A stretch of DNA of 64,000 bases from Macrostomum lignano (Eukaryota), in contig NIVC01000350.1 in the NCBI GenBank assembly GCA_002269645.1, positions 1 to 64,000 of the forward strand, in the 5' to 3' direction. The notes below the pieces were generated by a model, which worked only from the letters and a program-made list of their open reading frames with translations, had not been told where the DNA came from and ran no database searches. Position 1 is the first letter of the stretch, and each line of letters begins with the position of its first letter. A program made the position numbers and the translations under genes. Below are positions 471 through 63,978 of this stretch, in pieces.

Positions 471-907
471 CCCCAAAACAATACGACGTAATTGCATTGA
501 ACCATAGATATACATAGAGCGGCCAAGTGAAGGAGAAATAATGTAACCGCGATTTATCTCCAGATTACAAACTCTATTGGCAAAATTGCAATCAAGTTTG
601 GCCTTATAAGTTCGGAATTCCACGGCAACTGGCCCAGCATTCCTCGCTCCCGGCAACCCACCCCACGTTTTTCTGGCCGATAGCGAATGAGGCAGCAGCA
701 GCGGAGAGCCCAATCCAGTTTTATCCGCCAGCCGCCGCGCGCCCGCTATCTGAGCCGCACCAAGCTCTCTACACGGACAAGACCAGCTTCTTTGAAGTTT
801 CAGAAATTTGCGCCAAACTCTTAACTTTGTGTAGGCTTGGCATGAAGCGATCTCACGACTTTTTGGGGCAGACCCGGTCGCCTCCTATTGGTGAGTTAAA
901 CAGACTA

Positions 908-1850
908 ACAATCCATTCTATCCCTGTATCCATGATGTAGGTTAGATCAGCAATCCATTCTATTCCTTCATCCATGATGTAGGCTAGATTAGCAATCCAT
1001 TCTATTCCTGCATCCATGATGTAAGCTAGATTAGCAATCCATTCTATTCCTGCATCCATGATGTAGGCTAGATTAGCAATCCATTCTATTCTCATACATG
1101 ATGAAGACTAGATTAGCAATCCATTCTATTCCTGCACCCATGATGTAGGCTAGATTAGCAATGCATTCTATTCCTGCATCCATGATGTAAGCTAGATTAG
1201 CAACCCATTCTATTCCTGCATCCATGATGTAAGCTAGATTAGCAATCCATTCTATCCCTGCATCCATGATGTAGGCTAGATTAGCAATCCATTCTATTCC
1301 TGCATCCATGATGTAGGCTAGATTAGCAATCCATTCTATCCCTGCATCCATGATGTAGGCTAGATTAGCAATCCATCCTATTCCTGCATCCATGATGTAG
1401 GCTAGATTAGCAATCCATTCTATTCCTGCATCCTTGATGTAGGCTAGATTAGCAATCCATTCTATTCCTGCATCCATGATGTAGGCTAGATTAGCAATCC
1501 ATTCTATTCTGCATCCATGATGTAGGCTAGATTAGCAATCCATTATATTCCTGCATCCATGATGTAGACTAGATTAGCAATCCATTCTATTCCTGCATCC
1601 ATGATGTAGGCTAGATTAGCAATCCATTCTATTCCTTCATCCATGATGTAGGCTAGATTAGCAATCCATTCTATTCCTGCATCCATGATGTAAGCTAGAT
1701 TAGCAATCCATTCTATTCCTGCATCCATGATGTAGGCATGATTAGCAATCCATTCTATTCCTGCATCCTTGATGTAGGCTAGATTAGCAATCCATTCTGT
1801 TCCTGCATCCTTGATGTAGGCTAGATTAGCAATCCATTCTGTTCTAATCA
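908..1850 (-). repeat. 42-bp minisatellite family W (ATGGATGCAGGAATAGAATGGATTGCTAATCTAGCCTACATC), reverse orientation
   Basis: About 22 units; reverse complement of the array at 14962-16191. Confidence 0.95.
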
Positions 1851-3387
1851 GGGCCTTTTTGTCGCAGGGATGTCCAGACATTCTGATCATGCTCATCATT
1901 TCGTTGCTCCTCCTCACTCTTCGAAATTCAACTGTCAATTGCTGGGTTTGTTAGCGATCAAGTCGACCTGGGATCAAATTGAATACTAATTTTCTAAGAA
2001 TTTCGTGGTCAAGATCAGCCAGATTGCAGACCTAGCTGTAATCTCCTATCTCCCTCCGTGGTCTTTGTGGCCGCCAGTCTTTGTCCGGCGTTAACGGTCC
2101 ATCAAATCTCTGTCTGCGGCGGCCTCCCCTCCCGCCGCTTGTTTTCCGCCAAACCTGTCATCAGGCAGGACCATGGGAGAAATCGAATTTAGGGATCGAA
2201 TCATGTCTGCTCTGTGCCCCATCCCCCGACGCGCTTCAAGTGTCTGCATGCACCGGCGGCAACTTTTCTTTCCCATCTTTCTCTTCTTTTTTCCCCAGCC
2301 CCCTGGTTTCCTCTCTTTTCATCGCAGTTGCCAAGGGCGCCTCCATTCATCCTTGACGGTTGTGGCAACCCCCCTCTCCACCTCACTGATTCTTCCCAGA
2401 TCTGCCAGCTTCCCAGAAGGCCAATTATCTCCCAAAGCTTCATCGTGAGCAATCGCTTTATGTAAGATGCTTCGCAGCTACGGTGTCCCGGGTGCCGCTC
2501 CGCCCCCCGTCCCCAACACCCCCCCCTGGCGCTTGTGTTTACCCTCCGCCAGGTTCCTCTGATCCCATCCTCCGCTGCCTGCATCAGGCTGCTTCATCAT
2601 TTTGCCAGCTTCCCCCTTCACTTTCCCGCGCTTTCGGTTAGCAACTAAAATCCTGCCAGAGGCCACACTGAATGATGATTATTATTAAGATGATGGGACT
2701 TATCACTGCGCGCATCTATACACACACTTATACACACGGTACGTGACAAGTCTGACCGCCTTAGCAAGTGGGTTCGAATCGCAGAAAATCCCTGAAAATT
2801 TATTGCCCAATACTTGGCTAATTATTGCAGGGTGAAATCGAGCTGCACTAACTAATCAAAATCGTTTCTTGTCAAGATTTCTGTTTCTCCTGCAACTTGT
2901 TCAGCTTCAGAGAAATGTCTGCTTATAGTAGTTTGCTGCGTCGGTGCAGTGCGTGCTGCTTGCAGTGATCCCTGTCCATACATTGGCCGCGGTAATCCAT
3001 CACCGCGAGAGCCGCGTGGGCTTCGGGCTGCCACCTCCGCCCACCCGAGTTTTCAACACGCGCCGATCTAGTCCGAGGGAAAAAAAGAGGAAAATAGGCT
3101 CCTACGTTTATCCTTTTGATTTCCTGCCTATTTTTCTGCTTCTTTATTCGATAATCAATTTGCGTCTTGCGCGGCGCGCTTGCGCAATTATTTGCTAGAT
3201 GATCTTCGCTGTGCATCACAGATTGTTAGCGACTGCTGGTTCGGTTCTTTGCGAACTTTTTTTTTACTGATAAACTCACTGCTGTGGGCTACTTTGGACC
3301 CCTTTGTTTATCATTTTAACTGGGTTGCTTCTTAGTTCCAGCTACCGCCTCCTCTGCCGCTTCTGTCCGCAGCTTTTCCACCTGCCC

Positions 3388-6383
3388 TCCTCTCTCCTCT
3401 CCTCTCTCCTCTCATCTCCTCTCCTCTCCTCTCCTCTCCTCTCTCCTCTCCTCTCCTCTCCTCTCTCCTCTCCTCTCCTCTCTCTCCTCTCTCTCTCTCC
3501 TCTCCTCTCCTCTCCTCTCTCCTCTCCTCTCCTCTCCTCTCCTCCTCTCTCCTCTCATCTCCTCTCCTCTCCTCTCCTCTCTCCCCTCCTTTCTTCTCTT
3601 CTCTCTCCTCTCCTCTCCCCTCTCCTCTCATCTCCTCTCCTCTCCTCTCCTCTCTCCTCTCCTCTCTCTCCTCTCCTCTCCTCTCCTCTCCTCTCTCCTC
3701 TCTCCTCTCCTCTCTCCTCTCTTCTCTCCTCTCCTCTATCCTCCTCTCTCCTCTCCTCTCCTCTCCTCTCCTCTCCTCTCCTCTCCCTCTCTCCTCTCCT
3801 CTCCTCTCCTCTCTCCTCTCCTCTCCTGTCCTCTCCTCTCTCCTCTCCTCTCCTCTCCTCTCCTCTCTCCTCTCATCTCCTCTCCTCTCCTCTCTCCCCT
3901 CCTTTCTTCTCTCTCTCTCCTCTCCTCTCCCCTCTCCTCTCATCTCCTCTCCTCTCCTCTCTCCTCTCCTCTCCTCTCCTCTCCTCTCCTCTCCTCTCCT
4001 CTCTCCTCTCTCCTCTCCTCTCTCCTCTCTTCTCTCTCTCCTCTATCCTCTCTCCTCTCCTCTCCTCTCCTCTCCTCTCCTCTCTCCTCTCCTCTCCTCT
4101 CCTCTCTCCTCTCCTCTCCTGTCCTCTCCTCTCTCCTCTCCTCTCCTCCCTCCTCTCTCCTCTCTTCTCTCCTCTCCTCTCTCCTCTCCTCTCTCCTCTC
4201 CTCTCCTGTCCTCTCCTCTCTCCTCTCCTCTCCTCTCCTCTCCTCTCCTCTCTCCTCTCATCTCCTCTCCTCTCCTCTCTCCCCTCCTTTCTTCTCTTCT
4301 CTCTCCTCTCCTCTCCCTCTCCTCTCATCCTCTCTCTCCTCTCTCCTCTCCTCTCCTCTCCTCTCCTCTCCTCTCCTCTCCTCTCCTCTCCTCTCTCTCT
4401 CCTCTCTCCTCTCCTCTCTCCTCTCTTCTCTCCTCTCCTCTATCCTCTCTCCTCTCCTCTCCTCTCATCTCCTCTCCTCTCCTCTCCTCTCTCCCCTCCT
4501 TTCTTCTCTTCTCTCTCCTCTCCTCTCCCCTCTCCTCTCATCTCCTCTCCTCTCCTCTCCTCTCTCCTCTCCTCTCCTCTCCTCTCCTCTCCTCTCCTCT
4601 CCTCTCTCCTCTCTCCTCTCCTCTCTCCTCTCTTCTCTCCTCTCCTCTATCCTCTCTCCTCTCCTCTCCTCTCCTCTCCTCTCCTCTCCTCTCCTCTCCT
4701 CTCTCCTCTCCTCTCCTCTCCTCTCTCCTCTCCTCTCCTGTCCTCTCCTCTCTCCTCTCCTCTCCTCTCCTCTCCTCTCTCCTCTCATCTCCTCTCCTCT
4801 CCTCTCTCCCCTCCTTTCTTCTCTTCTCTCTCCTCTCCTCTCCCTCTCCTCTCATCTCCTCTCCTCTCCTCTCCTCTCTCCTCTCCTCTCCTCTCCTCTC
4901 CTCTCCTCTCCTCTCCTCTCTCCTCTCTCCTCTCCTCTCTCCTCTCTTCTCTCCTCTCCTCTATCCTCTCTCCTCTCCTCTCCTCTCCTCTCCTCTCCTC
5001 TCTCCTCTCCTCTCCTCTCCTCTCTCCTCTCCTCTCCTGTCCTCTCCTCTCTCCTCTCCTCTCCTCCCTCCTCTCTCCTCTCTTCTCTCCTCTCCTCTCT
5101 CCTCTCCTCTCTCCTCTCCTCTCCTGTCCTCTCCTCTCTCCTCTCCTCTCCTCTCCTCTCCTCTCCTCTCTCCTCTCATCTCCTCTCCTCTCCTCTCTCC
5201 TCTCCTCTCCTGTCCTCTCCTCTCTCCTCTCCTCTCCTCCCTCCTCTCTCCTCTCTTCTCTCCTCTCCTCTCTCCTCTCCTCTCTCCTCTCCTCTCCTGT
5301 CCTCTCCTCTCTCCTCTCCTCTCCTCTCCTCTCCTCTCTCCTCTCCTCTCCTGTCCTCTCCTCTCTCCTCTCCTCTCCTCTCCTCTCCTCTCTCCTCTCA
5401 TCTCCTCTCCTCTCCTCTCTCCCCTCCTTTCTTCTCTTCTCTCTCCTCTCCTCTCCCCTCTCCTCTCATCTCCTCTCCTCTCCTCTCCTCTCTCCTCTCC
5501 TCTCCTCTCCTCTCCTCTCCTCTCCTCTCCTCTCTCCTCTCTCCTCTCCTCTCTCCTCTCTTCTCTCCTCTCCTCTATCCTCTCTCCTCTCCTCTCCTCT
5601 CCTCTCCTCTCCTCTCTCCTCTCCTCTCCTCTCCTCTCTCCTCTCCTCTCCTGTCCTCTCCTCTCTCCTCTCCTCTCCTCCCTCCTCTCTCCTCTCTTCT
5701 CTCCTCTCCTCTCTCCTCTCCTCTCTCCTCTCCTCTCCTGTCCTCTCCTCTCTCCTCTCCTCTCCTCTCCTCTCCTCTCCTCTCTCCTCTCATCTCCTCT
5801 CCTCTCCTCTCTCCCCTCCTTTCTTCTCTTCTCTCTCCTCTCCTCTCCCCTCTCCTCTCATCTCCTCTCCTCTCCTCTCTCCTCTCCTCTCCTCTTCTCT
5901 CTCTCCTCTCCTCTCCTCTCCTCTCCTCTCCTCTCTCCTCTCTCCTCTCCTCTCTCCTCTCTTCTCTCCTCTCCTCTATCCTCTCTCCTCTCCTCTCCTC
6001 TCCTCTCCTCTCCTCTCCTCTCTCCTCTCCTCTCCTCTCCTCTCTCCTCTCCTCTCCTGTCCTCTCCTCTCTCCTCTCCTCTCCTCCCTCCTCTCTCCTC
6101 TCTTCTCTCCTCTCCTTTCTTCTCTTCTCTCTCCTCTCCTCTCCTCTCTTCTCTCCTCTCCTCTCCTCTCCTCTCCTCTCCTCTCCTCTCCTCTCCTCTC
6201 TCCTCTCCTCTCTTCTCTTCTCTCTCCTCTCCTCTCTCCTCTCTCCTCTCCTCTCTCCTCTCCTCTCTCCTCTCATCTCCTCTCTCCTCTCTCCTCTCTC
6301 CTCTCCTCTCCTCTCTCCTCTCCTCTCTCCTCTCCTCTCTCCTCTCCTCTTTCCTCTCCTCTCTCCTCTCCTCTCTCCTCTCA
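3388..6383. repeat. About 3-kb (CCTCT)n polypyrimidine/polypurine tract
   Basis: Almost only C/T on the + strand, with recurring landmark variants (CTCCCCTCCTTTCTT, TATCC, TGTCC, TCATC). Confidence 0.97.
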
Positions 6384-14463: not shown

Positions 14464-14961
14464 AAAACAGTATTTTTCAGAACAAATCAATCCTGCAAGT
14501 CTTTATTGAAGTCCTAATCTCTTAAAATACATAATCGAACGGATTTTCTCAGAGTAATCTATTACAGTACCTATAAAAAACTTTAGCTAAAAGGAAACAT
14601 GTTCAATTTTAAGGGCCAAGTCAAGGCGTCAGTTCCCACATTATCATGATATGCCCTCTCAGTAATCAGCTAATAATAGTAGTACTAACAGCAAGATAAT
14701 AGGTAAACAACTGTAACTGTCTGGGTAAAATTGCTCCATGGCATATTGAAATGTATCTCATTTAATCTGCCATAACTTATTCAAACGCTTCCTAACCTCT
14801 GAAATCGCTCGTACCTGTAGCTTGTGTCCGCTTGTGACAGCTTCTAGTTAAGATTCTCCATTTATCATATAAACTCTGTTATGCATATAAATAAAAGATT
14901 TGTGTAAAGTGCCTCTGTACTCTAACTTTGCTATGTACTTAAGGCTTGCAAAATATTCACA

Positions 14962-16191
14962 ATGGATTGCTAATCTAGCCTACATCATGGATGCAGGAAC
15001 AGAATGGATTGCTAATCTAGCCTACATCATGGATGAAGGAATAGAATGGATTGCTAATCTAGCCTAGAAATTGGATGCAGGAACAGAATGGATTGCTAAT
15101 CTAGCCTACATCATGGATGCAGGAATAGAATGGATTGCTAATCTAGCCTAGATAATGGATGAAGGAACAGAGTGGATTGCTAATCTAGCCTACATCAAGG
15201 ATGAAGGAACAGAATGGATTGCTAATGTAGCCTACATTATTGATGAAGGAATAGAATGGATTGCTAATCTAGCCTACATCATTGATGCCGGATAGGATGG
15301 ATTGCTAATCTAGCCTACATCATGGATACAGGAATAGAATGGATTGCTAATCTAGCCTACATCATGGATAAAGGAATAGAATGGATTGCTAATCTAGCCT
15401 ACATCATGGATGCAGGAATAGAATGGATTGCTAATCTAGCCTACATCATGGATGAAGGAATAGAATGGATTGCTAATCTAGCCTACATCATGGATGAAGG
15501 AACAGAATGGATTGCTAATCTAGCCTACATCATGGATGAAGGAATAGAATGGATTGCTAATCTAGCCTACATCATGGATGCAGGAATAGAATGGATTGCT
15601 AATCTAGCCTACATCATGGATTCAGGAATAGAATGGATTGCTAATCTAGCCTACATCATGGATGCAGGAATAGAATGGATTGCTAATCTAGCCTACATCA
15701 TGGATGAAGGAATAGAATGGATTGCTAATCTAGCCTAGATAATGGATGAAGGAACAGTGTGAATTGCTAATCTAGCCTACATCATGGATGAAGGAACAGA
15801 GTGGATTGCTAATCTAGCCTACATCATGGATACAGGGATAGAATGGATTGCTAATCTAGCCTACATCATGGATGCAGGAATAGAATGGATTGCTAATCTA
15901 GCCTACATCATGGATGAAGGAATAGAATGGATTGCTAATCTAGCCTACATCATGGATGCAGGAATAGAATGGATTGCTAATCTAGCCTACATCATGGATG
16001 CAGGAATAGAATGGATTGCTAATCTAGCCTAGATAATGGATGAAGGAACAGAGTGAATTGCTAATCTAGCCTACATCATGGATGAAGGAACAGAGTGGAT
16101 TGCTAATCTAGCCTACATCATGGATACAGGGATAGAATGGATTGCTAATCTAGCCTACATCATGGATGAAGGATTAGAGTAGATTGCTAAT
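14962..16191 (+). repeat. 42-bp minisatellite family W, forward orientation
   Basis: About 29 units of the same consensus as 908-1850. Confidence 0.95.
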
Positions 16192-16418
16192 CAGGCCAAG
16201 GCATTATACATACCCGGTAACTTATTAAACAACTTAATAAGGACTCCGCATCAAGATGACTATTTAGAAGCGTCTATCACATCCAGTAACCAGTTGTTCT
16301 TATTGTTCTATGGCAATTAGCTGTTCTCACTAGAAGCTAACAATTATTTTAACAACCGCTGTAAAAGTACATGTATAGTTCTGCGCAGCAAGAAATTCAC
16401 ACAGCCAGCCAGCCAGCC

Positions 16419-17359
16419 ATGATTCGCATCAGCAACCAGCAGGAGTTCGCCTCCATAGCGCTGGGCTCGGACGCCAAGCTGTGGATCGAGCAGTCGTCAA
16501 GCGCCGCGCCGAACGGCGAGATGCGAATCCGGTTCCGCGCATTCCGCCCCGCCCCCCTGGACGTCCTGCCTACGTACGCCGCCGCTGACGGAGTCGCCTC
16601 TACCGCTTGGCCACCCGTCCCGGTGGCGGCCACCCTCTACCTGTCGCCCAATCACGAGGACGTAGAGGAGGCCAGGTGCAAACGGATACTGGTGACTCGG
16701 CGAAGCGGCAACGGAGAGTCCTGCAAGGTGCGGCCGCGGTTGTGGCTGTGCGAGAATCTTTTGGAGGAAAGGGGATGTCTGGAAGTGCAGTGGGATCTCT
16801 GGATGATAGTGGGATCTCTAAGAGGGTAATGGGGTCTCTAGAAAGGTAGTGGGATGTCTGAAAGGTAGTGGGGTTTCTAAGAGGGTAGTGGGATCTGTGG
16901 AAAAGTAGTGGAATCTCTGGAAGGGTAGTGGCTAGTGGGATCTCTTGAAGGTAGGATCTCTGGAAGGTAGTAGGATCTCTGGAAGGGCAGTGGAATCTCT
17001 AGGAAGGTAGTAGGATCTCCTTAATGGTAGTGGGATCTCTGGGATGGTAGTGGGATCTCTGCGAGGGTAGTGGGGTCTATGGAAGGGTAGTGGCATCTCT
17101 GGAATGGTATTGGAATCTATATGATAGAGGGTAGTGAATTGTAAAATGTACTCGATACATGTACATGCAACTGTAAATCACCCAATCCAATCAGGATCTG
17201 TTGGGCTTCGTGCCAGGACGCGACAGCGACACTGACGACCTGGTGCTTGTGCAGCTGGAGCAGATAGAGGAGCGGGCGCAGGCCACCGATGTACCGGTGG
17301 GTGTGGAACTTCTGGTCAGCTCGCATACCAGCTCATCCGTCACTGGCCTGGTCGACTGA
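16419..17359 (+). CDS. Two-exon hypothetical protein, 157 aa, no recognised domain
   Basis: Exon 16419-16727 (ATG to AAG|GTGCGG) and exon 17195-17359 (atcag|GAT to TGA) join in phase 0. Both are GC-rich islands in AT-rich or repeat sequence, and the intron holds a degenerate repeat of about 20 bp. Confidence 0.6.
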
Positions 17360-18519: not shown

Positions 18520-19726
18520 CTAGCGTTTCGCGTTACCATAGGAACCGCGCGCGGGCGGCACTTTAAAGCTGGCGGCGGCCTGGTACTGCAGCTGATAGGC
18601 CAGTGGGTGCACTTTGAAGCCGTACAGGCGCGGCACGAACTGATTGGCTGGCCGCTTGGGCCGGTATTCCGGGTGGACTAAAAATAGCATATGGGGAAAC
18701 CCCGTGCCGAAATAGGCCCCGTCGGTGTGGTGGTGCCGCGAAGACTTCGGCGTGTAGACGTCCTGGCATTTGGGGCAGTACAGCTTCACCATGGCCTCGC
18801 CAGGCACGTCGGATAGGCCTGCAGGGTGAGGGCGATGGGGAAGGAGTGTTGTGACCCACCCCGTTCTTATCAAACCAGCGCCCACCCCCTTTCTTATAAA
18901 AAACGCACCCACCCCCATTCTTATCAAACCCGCACCCACTTCATTCTTATTAAACCCGCACCCACCCCATTCTTATCTTAAACCCGCACCCACCCCATTC
19001 TTATCAAACCCGCACCCACTTCATTCTTATTAAACCCGCACCCGCACCCCATTCTTATCAATTCTTACCCGCACCCACCCCATTCTTATCAAACCCGCAC
19101 TCACCCCATTCTTATCAAACCCGCATACACCCCATTCTTATCAAACCCGCACCAACCCCATTCTTATCAAACCCGCACTCACCCTATTCTTATCAAATCC
19201 GCACCCACCCCATTCTTATCAAACCCGCACCCACCCCATTCTTATCAAACCCGCATCCACTTCATTCTTATCAAACCCGCACCCACCCATTCTTATCAAA
19301 CCCGCACCCACCCCAACCTCCTCAACACACGCGGCAGAACACACAAGAGTCCAATCGCTCACCAATGGGCATCACTGGCTGATTCTCACAATAGACCCGA
19401 GGACAGTAGCTGAACTCGCCATTCTGCCATTTCTCAATCATCTGGGCGATGCCGCGGTTAGTCATGATGTAGCGAGCGTGGATGAGGCCGTACAGCATCT
19501 CGGCGGCCTGCTCAATGATGTCGGATTGGTTGGCATCGGACAGGTTGTCATCGGCTTCAAGATCGAGAATCATGTCCAGCGCCTGGTGATAGTGGGGCAC
19601 CTGTTCGTTCAGGCCGGTCAAGTTGAACTTGTCCTGAATGTAGTCTTCATCGACTTCGCAGAAGAATTCGTTGCCGCGAAGGCCGCAGAACCAGGAGATC
19701 CAAGACACTTCTTCACTGGAGCTCAT
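18520..19726 (-). CDS. CSNK2B: Casein kinase II regulatory subunit beta, 220 aa, 2 exons
   Basis: Exons 19726-19363 and 18818-18520 join in phase 1 (PI-G-LSD). Sequence has [39 protein letters not shown], the zinc-ribbon CPRVYC/CPKC and [26 protein letters not shown]. Confidence 0.98.
18855..19316. repeat. 26-bp intronic minisatellite (AAACCCGCACCCACCCCATTCTTATC)
   Basis: Fills the single CK2beta intron. Confidence 0.92.
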
Positions 19727-20870: not shown

Positions 20871-21002
20871 GTGGGTAGTGTGCAGTTGCCATCTATATCT
20901 AGACGCCTAAGTACTAAATTCTCTACTACAAGTAGGCAATCGCAATTTTGTCCCTAACTAGTGCGGCAGCTTCGTATCAGACCGGCTGCACCGTCGCAAG
21001 AG

Positions 21003-21311
21003 ATGAAGGACGAGGCTGGGCCGATGGCAACAGTCGATGGCGGGACGCCAGCAGCCGGACCAGCCGAGGCTGAAGCGGCGGCAACTGATGATGCGGTGGG
21101 CCCCAGCTTAGCCAAAGCAGACCGCCGTCTAGCCATGACAGCTAGCAACAGGCAGAGCGGTAAAGCCGCTGCAGCCAGAAGCAGAAAACGGTCTTTGTTG
21201 GGTGACGCTGCTCGAGATGATGTTGACACAGAAGATCGGATGCTGCTAGGAATAAAACGAAACCAACGAAGCAGCAAAGAGCCTGCAAATGCAATTAAGT
21301 TAAACAAATAA
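21003..21311 (+). CDS. Possible small low-complexity protein or exon (about 102 aa, basic RSRKR patch)
   Basis: GC-rich open frame MKDEAGP..AIKLNK* preceded by an acceptor-like ttttgtccctaactag. No recognisable domain, and the opposite strand is also open. Confidence 0.3.
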   Translation: MKDEAGPMATVDGGTPAAGPAEAEAAATDDAVGPSLAKADRRLAMTASNRQSGKAAAARSRKRSLLGDAARDDVDTEDRMLLGIKRNQRSSKEPANAIKLNK

Positions 21312-21549
21312 TTGGTAGAAATTGATTGCTATCATATACATAGAACTATAAAATAAAATTGAGTTTGCAATCAGCTTCCATACAGCATCATGCCTTAGTA
21401 TTTTCTTGATTTCAAATTCATTTGGTCTGCGAATGCTTGATTAGGATAAAAAGCTCCGCATATGTATACATGTATGTATTAATGTTGTGTACTTTCTCAA
21501 TCTCATTAATTAATCCGCTTTCCCTTTGCCTTTCTTGGCAACTCTTATC

Positions 21550-21900
21550 TAGTCCCTGACAGTCTTATATTCTCCCTGACAGGTCTCATCATATCGCTGA
21601 CAGGTCTTATCTTGTCCCTGAAAGGTCTTATCTTGTCCCTGACAGGTCTAATCTTATTCCTGACAGATCTTATCTTGTCCCTGACAGGTCTAATCTTATT
21701 CCTGACAGATCTTATCTTATCCCTGTCAGGTCTAATCTTATTCCTGACAGAACGTATCTAATCTCGGACAGATATTATCTTGTCCCTGAAAGATCTTATC
21801 TTGTCCCTGAAAGATCTTGTCTTATCTCTGACAGATCTTATCTGGTCCCTGACGGATCTTATCTTGTCTTTAACAAATCCATCTTGTCCCTGACAGGTTG
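21550..21900. repeat. Degenerate 21-bp repeat (CTTATCTTGTCCCTGACAGGT)
   Basis: About 16 imperfect units. Confidence 0.8.
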
Positions 21901-22018
21901 TATCCGTCTCGTCTCTTGTCTAGACACACCTAGCTTTCCGCCTACACGCTTAACATTGTCCTAACACACCAATATTGTCCCAACACACTAACTCCTGCCC
22001 ATACACCCCACAACCACA

Positions 22019-24998
22019 TCAGCGCAACTCACTCCGCAGTTTAGACAGCCAGCTCGCAGACTCGCTCCCGGAGTTGCCGGGACAAGGCCGGTCATCTGAC
22101 GAGCCAACAGTGGGCGCAGCGGCGGCAGCCAGAGGACTGGACTGAGCGGCAACATCCTCATCATCAGCAGCAGCATCGGCCATATGCTCAATAGTAGAGA
22201 ATGCTGTAGAATCCGATGCAGTCAGATTCAATAGCAAATCGTTGCCCAGACTAGTTTCATACTGTTCAGCGTATCGCAAATCTAATCGAGCTGTCAATCT
22301 ATCAGAGTCTGTCAGATCCGAGCCGCGATGTAAAACAGGATTATCCATCTGGCCAGATGCCTCCTCCAGCACAGCGGCCACTCGGCGAGTCTCGGCCGGG
22401 CCAACTGGGCCGCTAAAGCTGTTATTATTGGAATTGCGACCCGCAGGCAGCAGAGCGGCAAACTGTTGCATTGGCAGGCGTTGCCAGGCAACCCGATCAA
22501 CAGCATTAGTCGGTAGGCGGATTACGCTAGCCGAAACTGCGGCTGCTGCGTCGCCGAGGTCAACCTCGTCCGGGCCGAGGCACAGCACCACCAGCGACGG
22601 ACTGCCCGACGCGGCAGCTCGAAGAACGCGCCGACATTCGGCGGCCGATTCGCGGTAGCAACCAACGCCAGGCAACGGCAATTCCCTGGGAGCAGCTCGC
22701 CGCCGCTGCCACTCTGACTATCAATCGAGTCCCAAGCGGTGAGCGAGTAGCAACAGAGTCCGAGCTGCAGTCGCAGTCGCCTACTAAAGTAAGCGGCAAA
22801 CTGAACAGCCAGCCAGTCGTCAGTGTCGCCAGAATAGTACAGCGAACTGGCCAATATAATATCGTAGCAAGCGGCCGGATCATAGCCGATCTCGCTAACG
22901 GTCGATAGTCATCAATTGGAGTCCAAGTGACGCGCAGAATACGCGCCAGGGCGCGCCAACCGGCGCTATCAGTATCTAGAATAGTTGAGCCGGCGCCAAA
23001 CTGTAACAACGGATAGGCCAGAAAGTCAACCTCCGCCGGGCTCAACAATCCGGCATCGGTGTCGCCGTCGCCAACGTCCAGATTGGTCACCAGATAGCGG
23101 CCGCTCCAGGCGGGCCGGCGGCTGACCAGGTGTACAAATAGGCGAGGTAAGAAAGCGCGGAACAATCTGACAGTGCTAGGAGTGACCAGGAACATGCAGT
23201 ACTCAGCATCGGCTAGCGGGTCATCGGAGTCTTCATCGTCGCCATCTAGCCGACTGAGAAGCTGCTCAGCTGGCAGGCTCAGACAGCGGCAGGAGCGACG
23301 CTCGGCCTCCAACGCTAAACTGAGCCGTTGAACGAAGTCTTTCACCGAGCCAGCGGCCGCATCGCCCTCACTGAATAAGAGCCCGTCGGCGCTAACCAAT
23401 GCCAGTTTGAAATCGCGCCGGCGGCCGTAACAGCTGCCGGATTCGAACTCGCTGGCCAGCTGGCCGACGTTAACGCCGGCCAGGCTGTCGTCTGAGAAGG
23501 CGCCGCCTGACTGCGGGGAGTTTCGGCATGGCGGGGAGTTGGGGTGATTTTTAATAATCCCAAAAGCGTTGCCCTGACGGAACTAAGAGCCTGTATAGGA
23601 GAATATTCCATAGGGGATAGGGACATGATACCCCTCATGGGATCTTTTGGGCGATTTGCTACTCTATACTCGTACTCTAAATAATCTTTGGGCGTATCTC
23701 CCACTCCCTACAGATTCCTACGGTACAATCTGCCACTCCCTACAGGTTCCTACGGTACAATCTGCCACTCCCTACAGGTTCCTACGGTACAATCTGCCGC
23801 TCCCTACAGAATCCTACGGTACAATCTGCCGCTCCCTACAGAATCCTACGGCACAATCTCCCACTCCCTACAGAATCCTACGGTACAATCCCCCACTCCC
23901 TACAGAATCCTACGGCACAATCCTCCACTCCCTACAGATTCCTACGGCACAATCTGCCACTCCCTACAGAATCCTACGGTACGAGCTACAATCTACCACT
24001 CCCTACAGAATCCTACGGCACAATCTGCCACTCCCTACAGAATCCTACGGCACAATCTGCCACTCCCTACAGAATCCTACGGCACAATCTGCCACTCCCT
24101 ACAGAATCCTACGGTACGAGCTACAATCTACCACTCCCTACAGAATCCTACGGTACAATCTCCCACTCCTTACAGAATCCTACGGCACAATCTGCCACTC
24201 CCTACAGAATCCTACGGCACAATCTGCCACTCCCTACAGAATCCTACGGCACAATCTGCCCCAATCGAGCAGGTCTGCCACTCCTTAATTCCAGCAGAAA
24301 ATAACATTTACCCCGGACACATCGGGTGAGACGCTGCGCGTCTCAAATTCGTCTACAACCCGTCGGACGCGCCCGGATGCCGCCGAGTCGAACTCGTCGC
24401 CGGCGGCACCCAAGTCTTCAGGCGACTCGTTCAACATTAGGAAGATCGCCTTCCAGCACTCGGACTCCGCTAGCCAGATGGACTCAGCCTCGGACTCATC
24501 GAAGGTGTCGCCAGTCAAAGCTCGGAAAACAATCGGCTCTTGAGCCGAGGCCGCCTCGAAATCTAAGCCGTTAGTTAGGCCTTCAAATTCTTCCATAGCA
24601 ACAAAGATTAAACGCCGTCGGCAGCGTTGGCGACACCTGGCCCCACCGAGACCGGCCAGAAACTTTTTCAATGGTACTAGAGAGCGCGGACTGACTACTA
24701 ACAGGCAGTAGTCAGATAGGGACAGCAAATTAGATAGATAATTTCCAACTTCGTTTTCATTCTCAGCTACTGAGGCGGAGGACACGGCTGCGGCAGCGAC
24801 ATCGAAGGCCGAACAGCTGGCAGGCAGCGGACTGGCGCAGCCCAATAATTCATCGATTCGCCGTTTCAACAGGGCAGCGAATCGTTCAGCCAGACGGTCG
24901 GGCCTGGCCGGCACCACAGATTTCAAGGCGCGGCCATAGTCCGAGGGCGAGACCACGGTGAACCGGTGAGGCCTGGCCTGGCCGCTGTCCGCTGCCAT
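22019..24998 (-). CDS. Protein with three tandem TIR-like domains, about 726 aa after repairing two 1-nt frameshifts
   Basis: Exon 24998-24312 (GGG|GTAAAT) splices in phase 0 to ccccgcag|23510, which reads to the stop at 22019 if one C is restored at 22908 and one at 22654-22655. Three units share TIR-like spacing: betaA RFTVVSP/DFKLALVS/YDIILASS; alphaA LAERFAALLKRR..LLG vs LAVQFAAYFSRR..QLG; betaC DYCLLVVSP/EYCMFLVTP/RCLALVAT; terminal CWKAIF/GWRALA/AWQRL. Fold assigned by eye, not by HMM. Confidence 0.7.
23700..24260. repeat. 32-bp intronic minisatellite (CCTACAGAATCCTACGGCACAATCTGCCACTC)
   Basis: Fills the intron of the TIR-like gene. Confidence 0.92.
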
Positions 24999-54807: not shown

Positions 54808-55135
54808 ACACAAGCTTCACAATCCCCAAGCTTCACAACCCAAAAGCTTCATAATCCCCAAGCTTCACAATCCCAAGCTTCACAATATCCAAGCTTCACA
54901 ATCCCCAAGCTTCACAACCCAAAAGCTTCATAATCCCCAAGCTTCACAATCCCCAAGCTTCACAATATCCAAGCTTCACAATCCCCAAGCTTCACAATCC
55001 CCAAGCTTCACAATCTCCAAGCTTCACAATCCCCAAGCTTCACAATCCCCAAATCTTCACAATCCCCAAGCTTCACAATCTCCAAGCTTCACAATCTCCA
55101 AGCTTCACAATCCCCAAGCTTCACAATCCACAATC
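54808..55135 (+). repeat. 16-bp minisatellite family H (CAAGCTTCACAATCCC), forward
   Basis: About 20 imperfect units; reverse complement of 62655-63355. Confidence 0.92.
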
Positions 55136-62000: not shown

Positions 62001-63978
62001 GCCTGCCTGCCTGCCTGCCTGCCAAAACAGCCAGTTGCAGTTCAACAAAAAGAAACACAGCACGAAATAGAAAAAAAACTGGATGCAATTTTCTGGCTCA
62101 AAAACTGCAGCAGCACTGCGATTTGCTTCAGTTAGCCCAGACCGGGAGCCAGTCGCTAAGTGGCGCGTGTTAATAGGAAATTCAAGATCCCAACCCTCCA
62201 TCTTGCCCCCCCCCCTATTCCCAGTAGGCATAAACATGACAATTCTGCTAGATAAGTCTTGTGTAAGATGTTCATGCCTCACAGAAATTTGTTTCTGCTC
62301 AACTGCTTTTCAATATAATTGTCAATGGAGTCTGCCCCCCCCCTCCTAGAAGAAGAAGACTGCAGCGGAGAGAAACAGGTGCGAGAAAATTTTATCGCGA
62401 TTAAAAATGGAGAGCGCAGCTGATGAAAATAACTTTTTTGTGCTCTGCCGACAACTCTTTCATCTCATTATGTCTTTTGAAGGCCTTCCCGGTGCCGCAG
62501 GCTTCCACATTTCAGCTTCGATATCCCTTGTTGCCACCCTCAGCTGTGCCGCTCTTTAACTTCCCCAACCATCTTGAGACTGAGATAAAAGCATTTCTAC
62601 CCACCCCAAAAGGCAGAGAACAGGAGGTAGCTACTTCACAAACTAGACACTTCAGAATTGGGGATTGTGAAGCTTGGGGATTGTGAAGCTTGGGGATTGT
62701 GAAGCTTGGGGATTGTGAAGCTTGGAGATTGTGAAGCTTGGGGATTGTGAAGCTTGGGGATTGTGAAGCTTGGAGATTGTGAAGCTTGGGGATTGTGAAG
62801 CTTGGGGATTGTGAAGCTTGGGGATTGTGAAGCTTGGGGATTGTGAAGCTTGGGGATTGTGAAGCTTGGGGATTGTGAAGCTTGGGGATTGTGAAGCTTG
62901 GGGATTGTGAAGCTTGGGGATTGTGAAGCTTGGGGATTGTGAAGCTTGGGGATTGTGAAGCTTGGGGATTGTGAAGCTTGGGGATTGTGAAGCTTGGGGA
63001 TTGTGAAGCTTGGGGATTGTGAAGCTTGGGGATTGTGAAGCTTGGGGATTGTGAAGCTTGGGGATTGTGAAGCTTGGGGATTGTGAAGCTTGGGGATTGT
63101 GAAGCTTGGGGATTGTGAAGCTTGGGGATTGTGAAGCTTGGGGATTGTGAAGCTTGGGGATTGTGAAGCTTGGGGATTGTGAAGCTTGGGGATTGTGAAG
63201 CTTGGGGATTGTGAAGCTTTGGGATTGTGAAGCTTGGGGATTGAGAAGCTTGGGATTGTGAAGCTTGGGGATTGTGAAGCTTGGGGATTGTGAAGCTTGG
63301 GGATTGTGAAGCTTGGGGATTGTGAAGCTTGGGGATTGTGAAGCTTGGTGATTGTGCATTGGGGATAGCGAAACGTCCCCAAATTTTCGAAATGATTCGA
63401 GAAAGCCTCGTACAAAATGACTTTCTCACCATCCGGCGTCTCAAAAGCGCCCCCGTGCTGACGGAAATTTGCCGAGTTGCCAGTTGCCATGGCAACGCGC
63501 TGCCCGTTAGAGTTACCGACTCCATGCGACGATTGAGCCTGCGGCTGTGGCGGCTGCACAGACTTGGGCACGCCGTGGACTTTCTCCTTGTGCGTCCGCA
63601 GGAAATACTTGTTGCAGACCTCTTTGCGGCAGATGTCGCACACGACTCTGTCTGCCAGCTTGGCGGCCACCATCGAGGACTGGAATGCGTCGAGCTGGTG
63701 CTGGTGATGCGGCTGGTACGCCGGCGGCTGCTGGTGCTCGATCGAATCCAAGCTGGCCGACGACTGCGGCTGAGGCGGCGGCAGCGGCAGCGGCAGCGAG
63801 GCCTGAGTTGGCGGGGGTGGCGGTGGCGGCGGTGGCGGCGGTGGCGGTGGTTGCTGTGCAGTGGCAGCGGCCAGCTGCGCATAGGGGCCCATCAGCGCCG
63901 GGCCCAGAGCCAGCGGAAACGATCCCAACAGAAAGGGATTTAATCCCATAGCGGCTAGCAGAGGATTGGACACTGCAG
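58032..63978 (-). CDS. C2H2 zinc-finger protein, 3' part (5' end lies beyond the window)
   Basis: Exons 63978-63430 (GAT G|GTGAG), 59209-58833 (cctcctccag|CA to CAG|GTAAG) and 58385-58032 have matching phases. Two near-identical fingers CDICRKEVCNKYFLRTHKEKVH and CDVCGKEVCNKYFLRVHRLNKH, a third CPSCGLLCPSQEQLHRHLEQ(SH), and a PLNLS CtBP-like motif. The true C-terminus is uncertain. Confidence 0.85.
59238..60105. repeat. 43-bp intronic minisatellite (CAGCTTATCTATTGATGCTCAGAGCACTGACTGCTCAGACTCA)
   Basis: About 20 almost identical units. Confidence 0.96.
61195..61680. repeat. CT-rich degenerate repeat (CTCTCACTCTCACCCTGT-like)
   Basis: Low-complexity tandem units in a zinc-finger gene intron. 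Confidence 0.85.
62655..63355 (-). repeat. 16-bp minisatellite family H, reverse, intronic
   Basis: About 43 near-perfect GGGATTGTGAAGCTTG units in a zinc-finger gene intron. Confidence 0.95.

What the first reader, a model, noticed from the sequence alone, without database searches (positions are those of the whole stretch)
22019..24998. Hidden gene encoding three tandem, divergent TIR-like domains and no receptor or death domain
Seen: the ORF track splits this locus into four pieces. One phase-0 intron plus two restored Cs join them into a single protein of about 726 aa with three homologous units (LAERFAALLKRR..LLG vs LAVQFAAYFSRR..QLG; DYCLLVVSP/EYCMFLVTP/RCLALVAT; terminal W-x-x-L) and an acidic disordered tail. 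No LRR, TM, death or NACHT domain is visible. Established: NADase-active TIRs such as SARM1 use a Glu in the alphaC C-x-x-E-L motif. Here unit 3 reads AECRRVL, and units 1-2 show no Glu at the equivalent position. Inference: a catalytically dead, self-contained TIR scaffold or adaptor of a type not in the standard Toll toolkit.
Basis: partly seen in the sequence, partly recalled or inferred. Interest (0 to 1): 0.75.

Follow-up and report, generated by a model that had tools for sequence, protein, structure and literature searches.

The report
Flatworm orphan gene, three TIR-like repeats
This is a real gene of the flatworm Macrostomum lignano, already deposited as a "hypothetical protein", that encodes three tandem repeats whose predicted fold resembles the TIR immune-signalling domain only weakly; the two frame breaks in this copy are most likely sequencing errors.

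Summary
The window is 100% identical to Macrostomum lignano contig NIVC01000350.1 (Mlig_3_7). The locus is gene Mlig033572.g1, deposited as a 545-aa hypothetical protein.

**Gene model.** The phase-0 intron (24311..23511) is used by all public models. Two sibling copies in the same assembly carry one extra base at each frame break. Site 2 is exact (CC at 22655-22654). Site 1 lies at 22885|22884, not 22908. All four indels among the three copies are one-base losses in short C/T runs, so assembly error is likelier than pseudogenisation.

**Repeats.** The three units are real. A 31%-identical paralogue (Mlig018063/030938) has the same three units, and it too sits upstream of a CK2-beta gene.

**TIR call.**
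- Against: Pfam, PADLOC, NCBIfam and PDB sequence searches find nothing.
- For: an AlphaFold model of unit 1 (pLDDT 78) gives only weak Foldseek hits (E ≥ 0.047), with six different TIR proteins among them.
- For: a profile-profile comparison with real TIRs is colinear. It beats all shuffles and the CheY and flavodoxin controls (P 0.016; 0.0013 for the paralogue).
- The TIR catalytic Glu column aligns to Arg/Gly.

Verdict: a lineage-restricted family of probably TIR-like, probably non-catalytic domains. Function is untested and interest is modest.

The parts
24312..24998 (-). Exon 1 (ATG at 24998; 229 codons). It holds unit 1 (about 24974..24408) and the start of the acidic linker.
   Evidence: ORF and translation. 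Identical N-terminus in public models P0001, P0003, P0004 and P0005.
23511..24311 (-). Intron 1, GT..AG, phase 0. It is filled by a 32-nt tandem repeat (23696..24260, about 17 copies).
   Evidence: Sequence. Junction used by all public models. Tandem Repeats Finder.
22019..23510 (-). Exon 2, which in this copy reads in three frames (0, then 2, then 1). It holds the linker, unit 2 (23420..22908), unit 3 (22872..22439), the acidic tail (22438..22022) and the stop at 22021..22019 that applies if intron 2 is retained.
   Evidence: Three-frame translation. Alignment with public models. Unit alignment A2.
22884..22885 (-). Frame break 1. One base is absent between 22885 and 22884 (window GGC-TAT; siblings GGCTTAT and GGCCTAT).
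   Evidence: DNA alignment of the three genomic copies.
22654..22655 (-). Frame break 2. The window has CC where both siblings have CCC (CTACCGCG versus CTACCCGCG).
   Evidence: DNA alignment of the three genomic copies.
21283..22032 (-). Intron 2 of the public full-length models (donor GTGAGT at 22032, acceptor ...tttgcAG at 21283). It contains a 21-nt tandem repeat (21543..21898).
   Evidence: Sequence. Junction ...SKLRS|SLLLRW... in P0001, P0002, P0003 and P0005. Tandem Repeats Finder.
20954..21282 (-). Terminal exon of the public models (108 aa). It includes the hydrophobic stretch FLLLAAAALPLCLLLAVMA followed by RRR. Coding status is doubtful.
   Evidence: Translation and Kyte-Doolittle 2.68 over 19 residues. 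Codon-usage log-likelihood is 0.012 per codon against 0.18-0.30 for exons 1-2, and the overlapping + strand ORF scores 0.109.
18520..19726 (-). Casein kinase II beta-subunit gene, the next gene downstream on the same strand. Older UniProt models fuse it to this gene.
   Evidence: Called gene with PF01214 in L001, converted to window coordinates through the 100% match. Fused models P0001 and P0005.

Best explanation
The locus is one copy (Mlig033572.g1) of a protein-coding gene restricted, as far as the databases show, to Macrostomum lignano.

**Product.** The protein is about 726 aa, or 831 aa if the annotated last exon is coding. It consists of three tandem, strongly diverged alpha/beta domains of about 150-190 aa with a (beta-alpha)5, flavodoxin-like pattern. 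An acidic linker follows unit 1 and an acidic, probably disordered tail follows unit 3.

**Domains.** The domains are most likely very distant members of the TIR superfamily (inferred). The column of the TIR catalytic glutamate holds Arg or Gly, and no acidic residue is conserved across the six units. The protein is therefore more likely a non-enzymatic interaction or oligomerisation scaffold than an NAD(+)-cleaving enzyme (inferred, not shown).

**Frame breaks.** The two breaks in this copy are single-base losses in short homopolymers. They are more likely uncorrected PacBio consensus errors in a triplicated region than real lesions. In either case, an uninterrupted reading frame exists elsewhere in the same assembly.
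For: **Identity and annotation.**
- The window is 100% identical to NIVC01000350.1.
- Public models exist for this copy and its siblings.
- The annotation of that assembly is a genome-guided RNA-seq transcriptome (PMC5730564), so the gene family is transcribed.

**Long-term constraint on the ORF.**
- The paralogue P0006/P0007 matches at E 4e-47 and 31-33% identity, and is colinear over all three units.
- It is encoded as an uninterrupted 1054-codon ORF.

**Fold.**
- Unit 1 modelled with the six-unit alignment gives pLDDT 77.8 and pTM 0.79, with alternating strands and helices.
- In the low-confidence full-length model, unit 2 is predicted as five strands alternating with five helices.

**TIR.**
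- Foldseek's top 50 for unit 1 include TLR10, PdTIR, oyster TIR-STING, C. elegans TIR-1, BtTir and a Brucella TIR protein. No CheY or flavodoxin appears.
- hhalign of the family profile against eight TIRs scores 20.4 (P 0.016) and is colinear from beta-A to alpha-E. The TIR sequences were verified against PDB.
- None of 200 column-shuffled TIR profiles and none of 150 column-shuffled family profiles reaches that score.
- CheY scores 10.6, flavodoxin 9.7 and reversed TIR 12.3.
- The paralogue's units alone score 26.5 (P 0.0013).
- The Glu column aligns to R/G of FLxRL.

**Frame breaks.**
- Siblings have one extra base at both sites.
- Sibling L003 has its own two one-base C-run losses in exon 1, where the window is intact.
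- That makes four indels against about ten substitutions among copies that are 99.5% identical or more.
- The assembly is Canu PacBio polished with Pilon and holds 180 Mb of blocks duplicated at 95% identity or more (PMC5730564).
Against: **TIR.**
- No TIR, TIR_2, SEFIR or other family is hit in Pfam, PADLOC or NCBIfam at E <= 10.
- No PDB chain is hit by sequence or by profile.
- No Foldseek hit reaches E <= 0.001. TM-scores are 0.25-0.45, and the best single hit is the Tm-1 N-terminal domain, not a TIR.
- The low-confidence full-length model hits CheY-like and flavodoxin domains as readily as TIRs.
- hhalign probability is only 2.8-18%, and the window's own three units score at null level (12.5).
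- Beta-B is not predicted as a strand in the unit-1 model.

**Function.**
- There are no functional data of any kind.
- The few differences among recent copies are 7 nonsynonymous to 2 synonymous, so they give no sign of purifying selection on that time scale.

**Frame breaks.** Without reads, real frameshifts in this copy cannot be excluded.
Confidence: 0.5

Rival explanations
1. The three units are a lineage-specific flavodoxin-like alpha/beta domain with no common ancestry with TIR, or too remote to call. The weak TIR signal then reflects shared fold class only. Function would lie elsewhere, for example as a partner or substrate of the CK2 regulatory subunit encoded next door.
For: - All HMM and sequence searches are empty.
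- Foldseek E-values are all >= 0.047, with the Tm-1 domain first.
- The full-length model hits MenD, TadZ (CheY-like), flavodiiron flavodoxin domains and TIRs alike.
- The gene lies directly upstream of a CK2-beta gene at both paralogous loci.
Against: - hhalign singles out TIR over CheY and flavodoxin and over 350 shuffles.
- The alignment is colinear over the whole domain.
- Six different TIR proteins appear in the unit-1 top 50, but none of the far more numerous CheY or flavodoxin chains.
Confidence: 0.3
2. The window copy is a true, recently disabled duplicate. The two one-base deletions are real, the product is truncated or garbled after residue 437, and only the sibling copies make full-length protein.
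For: - The deposited sequence carries both deletions.
- The DV1 line is a neopolyploid with redundant copies free to decay (PMC5730564; PMC10733133, abstract).
- Substitutions among copies are mostly nonsynonymous.
Against: - All four indels among the three copies are single-base losses in short C/T runs. They fall in different copies, against only about ten substitutions. That ratio and context are typical of long-read consensus error.
- Polishing is unreliable where reads map to several copies.
Confidence: 0.3
3. The domains are enzymatically active TIR-type hydrolases that use non-canonical residues. This would parallel the recently described Raw/OLRN-1 family, in which two cryptic TIR domains together form a cADPR hydrolase pocket.
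For: - Raw shows that cryptic tandem TIRs in invertebrates can be enzymes with family-specific residues (PMC13455253).
- Unit-specific acidic residues are conserved between the two paralogues, for example EFEGL after beta-D of unit 1 and EVDFL in unit 2.
Against: - No residue other than one Phe and one Leu is invariant across the six units.
- phmmer over 1.84 billion representatives found no Raw-like relative.
- Unit 3 of the window protein has lost seven residues of the alpha-C region.
Confidence: 0.08

Closest known systems
TIR domain superfamily (Pfam TIR PF01582 / TIR_2 PF13676; e.g. TLR1/2/10, MyD88, SARM1, plant L6/RPS4)
   Same: - Predicted alternating beta/alpha pattern of similar size.
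- Weak but colinear profile-profile match from beta-A to alpha-E.
- A hydrophobic beta-A with aromatic residue-x-hydrophobic residues, like box 1.
- A Trp-x-x-Leu/Ile helix at the end, like box 3 (FW..L).
- TIR proteins are the most varied family among the Foldseek hits.
   Different: - No HMM match.
- No RDxxPG-type BB loop, except ARD in unit 3 of the paralogue.
- Arg/Gly where NADase TIRs have the alpha-C Glu.
- Long insertions between beta-B and alpha-B.
- Three copies in tandem with nothing else attached.
Raw / OLRN-1 (Drosophila, C. elegans): cryptic double-TIR cADPR hydrolases (PMC13455253; PMC2213652)
   Same: - An invertebrate, non-receptor protein.
- Its TIR folds escaped standard domain searches.
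- More than one TIR-fold domain per chain, with long disordered loops.
- A possible membrane-association segment in some members.
   Different: - Raw is DD1-TIR1-DD2-TIR2 with conserved Glu/Asp residues and measured cADPR hydrolase activity.
- Here there are three mutually homologous units with no conserved acidic residue.
- No detectable sequence similarity was seen in a full phmmer scan.
- A direct profile comparison could not be run, because no Raw sequence was obtainable with these tools.
Mollusc Toll-2 receptors with tandem TIR domains (PMC4929906)
   Same: More than one TIR domain in tandem in a spiralian protein.
   Different: Those are canonical, Pfam-detectable TIRs at the C-terminus of LRR-TM receptors. 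This protein has no LRR, and flatworms lack TLRs altogether (PMC8609888).
Flavodoxin-like fold in general (CheY receivers, flavodoxins)
   Same: (beta-alpha)5 three-layer sandwich. These folds appear among hits of the low-confidence full-length model.
   Different: hhalign scores against CheY and flavodoxin alignments are at null level (10.6 and 9.7, against a shuffle mean of 10.7). They are absent from the top 50 of the confident unit-1 model.

Membership tests
TIR domain (Pfam PF01582 / PF13676 / SEFIR) | Significant match to the family's profile HMM | tested here: not met
   There were no Pfam families at E <= 10 for the four pieces, the joined 726-aa protein or any of the six units. The one exception was a chance LytTR hit at 0.065. 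PADLOC and NCBIfam were also empty.
TIR domain (Pfam PF01582 / PF13676 / SEFIR) | Structure superposes on solved TIR domains (five-stranded parallel sheet, order 2-1-3-4-5, flanked by five helices) | tested here: inconclusive
   - The unit-1 model has pLDDT 77.8.
- Foldseek against PDB gives TLR10 at E 0.059 (TMq 0.31, TMt 0.39), PdTIR at 0.19 (TMt 0.45), and TIR-STING, TIR-1 and BtTir at 0.2-0.6.
- Nothing reaches E <= 0.001, and beta-B is not modelled.
- Strand order could not be read, because coordinates are not returned.
TIR domain (Pfam PF01582 / PF13676 / SEFIR) | Profile-profile similarity to TIR alignments, specific relative to other flavodoxin-like families | tested here: inconclusive
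   - hhalign gives 20.4 (P 0.016, probability 2.8%).
- The paralogue's units give 26.5 (P 0.0013, probability 18%).
- None of 350 shuffles reaches 20.4.
- CheY, flavodoxin and reversed TIR are at null level.
- The window's own units alone score 12.5.
NADase-type TIR (SARM1, plant TIRs, bacterial TIRs) | Catalytic Glu in alpha-C (W/C-x-x-E-L context) | tested here: not met
   In the hhalign alignment the Glu column falls on R (four units) or G (unit 1) of FLxRL, and in a seven-residue deletion in unit 3. The alignment confidence is low.
Raw / OLRN-1 TIR family | DD1-TIR1-DD2-TIR2 architecture with conserved F/C/E/E (TIR-1) and D/R/Y/D (TIR-2) residues; detectable homology to Raw | not testable with these tools
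   No Raw or OLRN-1 sequence could be fetched, and the paper's supplements are not held. Indirectly, phmmer over 1.84 billion representatives found only the M. lignano paralogue.
CheY-like receiver / flavodoxin | Profile similarity; acidic phospho-acceptor pocket or FMN loop | tested here: not met
   hhalign gives 10.6 and 9.7, equal to the shuffle mean. No conserved Asp pocket is present in alignment A2.

The most novel reading that the evidence does not exclude
A flatworm-specific family of triple cryptic TIR domains has been kept next to a CK2-beta gene through an old duplication. It acts as the missing TIR adaptor or regulator in an animal lineage that has lost Toll-like receptors. Alternatively, like Raw/OLRN-1, it is a non-canonical nucleotide-signal hydrolase working with the flatworm SARM homologue.
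Probability: 0.1. Interest if true: 0.7.

Novelty: new variant of a known kind. Interest (0 to 1): 0.35.

Why it matters
Flatworms have no Toll-like receptors yet retain TIR-domain proteins whose roles are unknown (PMC8609888, PMC7958881). The recent Raw/OLRN-1 work shows that TIR folds invisible to standard searches can be important enzymes in invertebrates (PMC13455253).

If these three units are true TIR folds, the family would add a TIR-only, three-domain, apparently non-catalytic architecture. M. lignano is the only flatworm with stable transgenesis (PMC8717057 abstract), so the idea is testable there.

If they are not TIR folds, the locus is simply a fast-evolving orphan gene.

The practical result is more certain. 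The deposited 545-aa product of this copy is an artefact of two one-base gaps, and the older UniProt entries named 'Casein kinase II subunit beta' are fusions of two genes.

Tried and rejected
1. **A 53-nt intron (22899..22847, GT..AG, right length class) instead of frame break 1.** Rejected. Both sibling copies keep one open frame through this stretch with one extra base, and all public models read through it.

2. **Word-indexed protein searches with the six-unit profile and with the paralogue.** They returned nothing, not even the proteins the queries came from. They are uninformative, not evidence of absence.

3. **BLASTP self-comparison of the protein.** No internal hit.

4. **Full-length AlphaFold model.** pLDDT 39, unusable. 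Its Foldseek hits count only as a hint of fold class.

5. **Foldseek against viral structures.** Nothing below E 0.19.

6. **PADLOC and NCBIfam scans for divergent bacterial TIR models.** Empty.

7. **Literature search for the gene identifiers.** No paper in the library.

8. **A C-terminal membrane anchor from the annotated last exon.** Not adopted. The frame has a near-zero codon-usage signal, and the opposite strand is equally open and scores slightly better.

9. **Transposon or repeat-derived ORF.** Rejected. Only two protein clusters exist, the three-unit architecture is maintained at 31% identity, and the neighbour gene is conserved. The + strand ORFs at 23647..24329 are merely translations of the intron's tandem repeat.
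Full report
**Where the window comes from**

It was UniRef A0A1I8HRW8 of Macrostomum lignano, named 'Casein kinase II subunit beta', 1037 aa.

The cluster holds five public models. One of them, PAA85030.1 (BOX15_Mlig033572g1, 545 aa), is encoded on contig NIVC01000350.1 of assembly GCA_002269645.1 (Mlig_3_7). The fetched locus is 100% identical to the window over 4201 bases. This very copy is deposited as a hypothetical protein.

**Gene model**

- On the minus strand, exon 1 runs 24998..24312 (229 codons).
- Intron 1 runs 24311..23511. It is GT..AG, phase 0, and is filled by a 32-nt tandem repeat.
- Exon 2 starts at 23510. All five public models use this junction.
- Downstream, the frame in the window goes from 0 to 2 to 1.
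- PAA85030.1 is simply the frame-0 read-through, ending in about 100 out-of-frame residues.
- Two sibling copies in the same assembly each carry one extra base at both places. They are L002 (NIVC01001871.1, Mlig023861g1) and L003 (NIVC01000609.1, Mlig033572g3).
  - Site 1: siblings have GGC[T or C]TAT where the window has GGC-TAT, between 22885 and 22884.
  - Site 2: siblings have CTACCCGCG where the window has CTACCGCG, at 22655-22654.
The first is 23 nt off, which changes eight residues.
- I had considered a 53-nt intron at the first break, but the siblings make it unnecessary.
They splice from a GTGAGT donor at 22032 to an acceptor at 21283 and add 108 residues.
- That exon would supply a hydrophobic 19-mer followed by RRR.
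- Its codon usage is near zero on a scale where exons 1-2 score 0.18-0.30, and the opposite strand is equally open. I leave its coding status open.

**Are the frame breaks real?**

- Window and siblings differ by only 4-6 substitutions over 2.2 kb.
- L003 has its own two one-base deletions in exon 1, again in C runs, where the window is intact. This is why its public model starts at Met135.
- That makes four indels, all single-base losses in short C/T runs and spread over different copies, against about ten substitutions. The pattern looks like long-read consensus error.
- Mlig_3_7 was built with Canu from PacBio data and polished with Pilon. The genome has 180 Mb of blocks that are 95% identical or more (PMC5730564), and polishing is weak in such regions.
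- I put assembly error at roughly two to one over a real pseudogene copy. Only reads can settle it.
- The annotation of that assembly is a genome-guided RNA-seq transcriptome. The family is therefore transcribed, although near-identical copies cannot be told apart.

**The repeats**

- Within the window protein alone the three-unit similarity is marginal. Smith-Waterman scores were reached by 6, 20 and 68 of 300 shuffles for the three pairs, and BLASTP self-comparison found nothing.
- A full HMMER scan of 1.84 billion representative proteins found exactly one other relative. It is PAA64332.1/PAA77530.1 (Mlig018063g1, Mlig030938g1), at E 4e-47 and 31-33% identity.
- That paralogue has three much clearer units, colinear with the window's, followed by a different low-complexity tail.
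- All six units align (alignment A2).
- The shared pattern is, in order:
  - a hydrophobic strand;
  - a helix with an invariant Phe;
  - a short strand;
  - a variable insert;
  - [S/A][E/D]YC plus a hydrophobic strand;
  - a helix carrying F..FL.RL;
  - a strand R.I.....G;
  - a short acidic segment;
  - a final helix W..L/I.
- The three-unit observation is therefore real at the family level.

**Is it TIR?**

Against:
- Pfam finds nothing at E <= 10 for the pieces, the joined protein or the six units.
- PADLOC and NCBIfam find nothing.
- PDB sequences are not hit by the protein or by the unit profile.

Structure:
- The full-length AlphaFold model is unusable (pLDDT 39). Its secondary structure for unit 2 is nevertheless a clean five-strand, five-helix alternation.
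- Unit 1 modelled with the six-unit alignment gives pLDDT 77.8 and pTM 0.79.
- Foldseek against PDB gives no hit at E <= 0.001.
- The list is headed by the Tm-1 N-terminal domain (E 0.047) and the TLR10 TIR (E 0.059).
- The top 50 contain six different TIR proteins, mixed with short matches to DHODH, GIMAP and others. No CheY or flavodoxin appears.
- The poor full-length model hits CheY-like, flavodoxin-like and TIR domains alike. It supports only the fold class.

Profile-profile test:
I checked them against PDB, and they match their entries at about 2.2 bits per residue.
- hhalign of the family profile against it scores 20.4 (P 0.016).
- With a permissive threshold the alignment runs colinearly from beta-A to alpha-E.
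- None of 200 column-shuffled TIR profiles reaches that score (mean 10.7, maximum 18.6). None of 150 column-shuffled family profiles does either.
- CheY, flavodoxin and reversed TIR score 10.6, 9.7 and 12.3.
- The signal comes mainly from the paralogue (26.5, P 0.0013) and the unit-1 pair (23.2). The window's own three units alone score 12.5.

My reading is that a flavodoxin-like fold is likely. TIR ancestry is the best available hypothesis at a little better than even odds, and the window's protein is the more eroded member of the family.

**Catalysis**

- In the hhalign alignment the column of the TIR catalytic Glu falls on Arg (four units) or Gly (unit 1) of the FLxRL motif.
- Unit 3 of the window protein lacks seven residues there.
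- Across the six units only one Phe and one Leu are invariant.
- Raw/OLRN-1 shows that cryptic TIRs can use other residues (PMC13455253).
- I could not obtain Raw sequences to test that relationship.

**Context and evolution**

- In all three copies the next gene downstream on the same strand is CK2-beta. The older UniProt models fuse the two genes.
- The paralogue is encoded without introns. It also lies upstream of a CK2-beta paralogue that is 53-66% identical to the window's.
- The gene pair was therefore duplicated as a block and has stayed together. Over the same period the three-unit gene diverged to 31% identity.
- Among the recent copies, substitutions are 7 nonsynonymous to 2 synonymous. 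That is too few for a test, but it is consistent with fast evolution.
- Flatworms lack Toll-like receptors (PMC8609888) but do have TIR proteins (PMC7958881).

**Verdict**

One coordinate needs correcting, and the 3' end is probably longer at the transcript level.
- The TIR interpretation is plausible but only weakly supported.
- 'Catalytically dead scaffold' is an inference without functional evidence.
- The gene is already in the databases as a hypothetical protein.

Noticed in passing
window 18520..19726 (-) and L004 13724..15165: The three-unit gene sits directly upstream, on the same strand, of a casein kinase II beta gene at both paralogous loci. The two CK2-beta copies are 53-66% identical, while the three-unit genes are only 31% identical. 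Older UniProt models fuse the pair, so a shared precursor transcript resolved by trans-splicing is possible.
   Followed up: partly
window 20954..21311, both strands: The terminal exon of the public models (minus strand, 108 aa with a hydrophobic 19-mer) overlaps an equally long open frame on the + strand (20961..21311, 116 aa, hydrophilic). The + strand frame has slightly better codon usage. Which frame is translated, if either, is unclear.
   Followed up: partly
L003 (NIVC01000609.1) exon 1, alignment columns 52 and 191: The sibling copy Mlig033572g3 has its own two one-base C-run deletions in exon 1. This explains why its deposited protein starts at Met135. One-base gaps at different places in two of the three copies point to a systematic assembly artefact in this GC-rich gene.
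   Followed up: yes
window 3387..6382: A 3-kb pure pyrimidine (CT-rich) microsatellite on the + strand, with periods 5, 12 and 17. GC skew is -0.98 and AT skew is -0.96.
   Followed up: no
window 902..1844 vs 14961..16192; 54811..55133 vs 62658..63356: Two pairs of minisatellite arrays have consensus units that are reverse complements of each other (42-nt and 16-nt units). The same satellite is therefore present in inverted orientation 13 kb and 8 kb apart.
   Followed up: no
window, whole length: The window is extremely dense in minisatellites with 16-44-nt units (about 30 arrays). Both introns of the gene contain one (23696..24260 and 21543..21898). The long + strand ORFs at 23647..24329 are translations of the intron repeat, not genes.
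   Followed up: partly
window 16371..17359 (+): A called gene of 173 aa with no Pfam hit lies here in the public annotation. It overlaps a 20-nt tandem repeat (16772..17118), so it may be repeat-derived.
   Followed up: no
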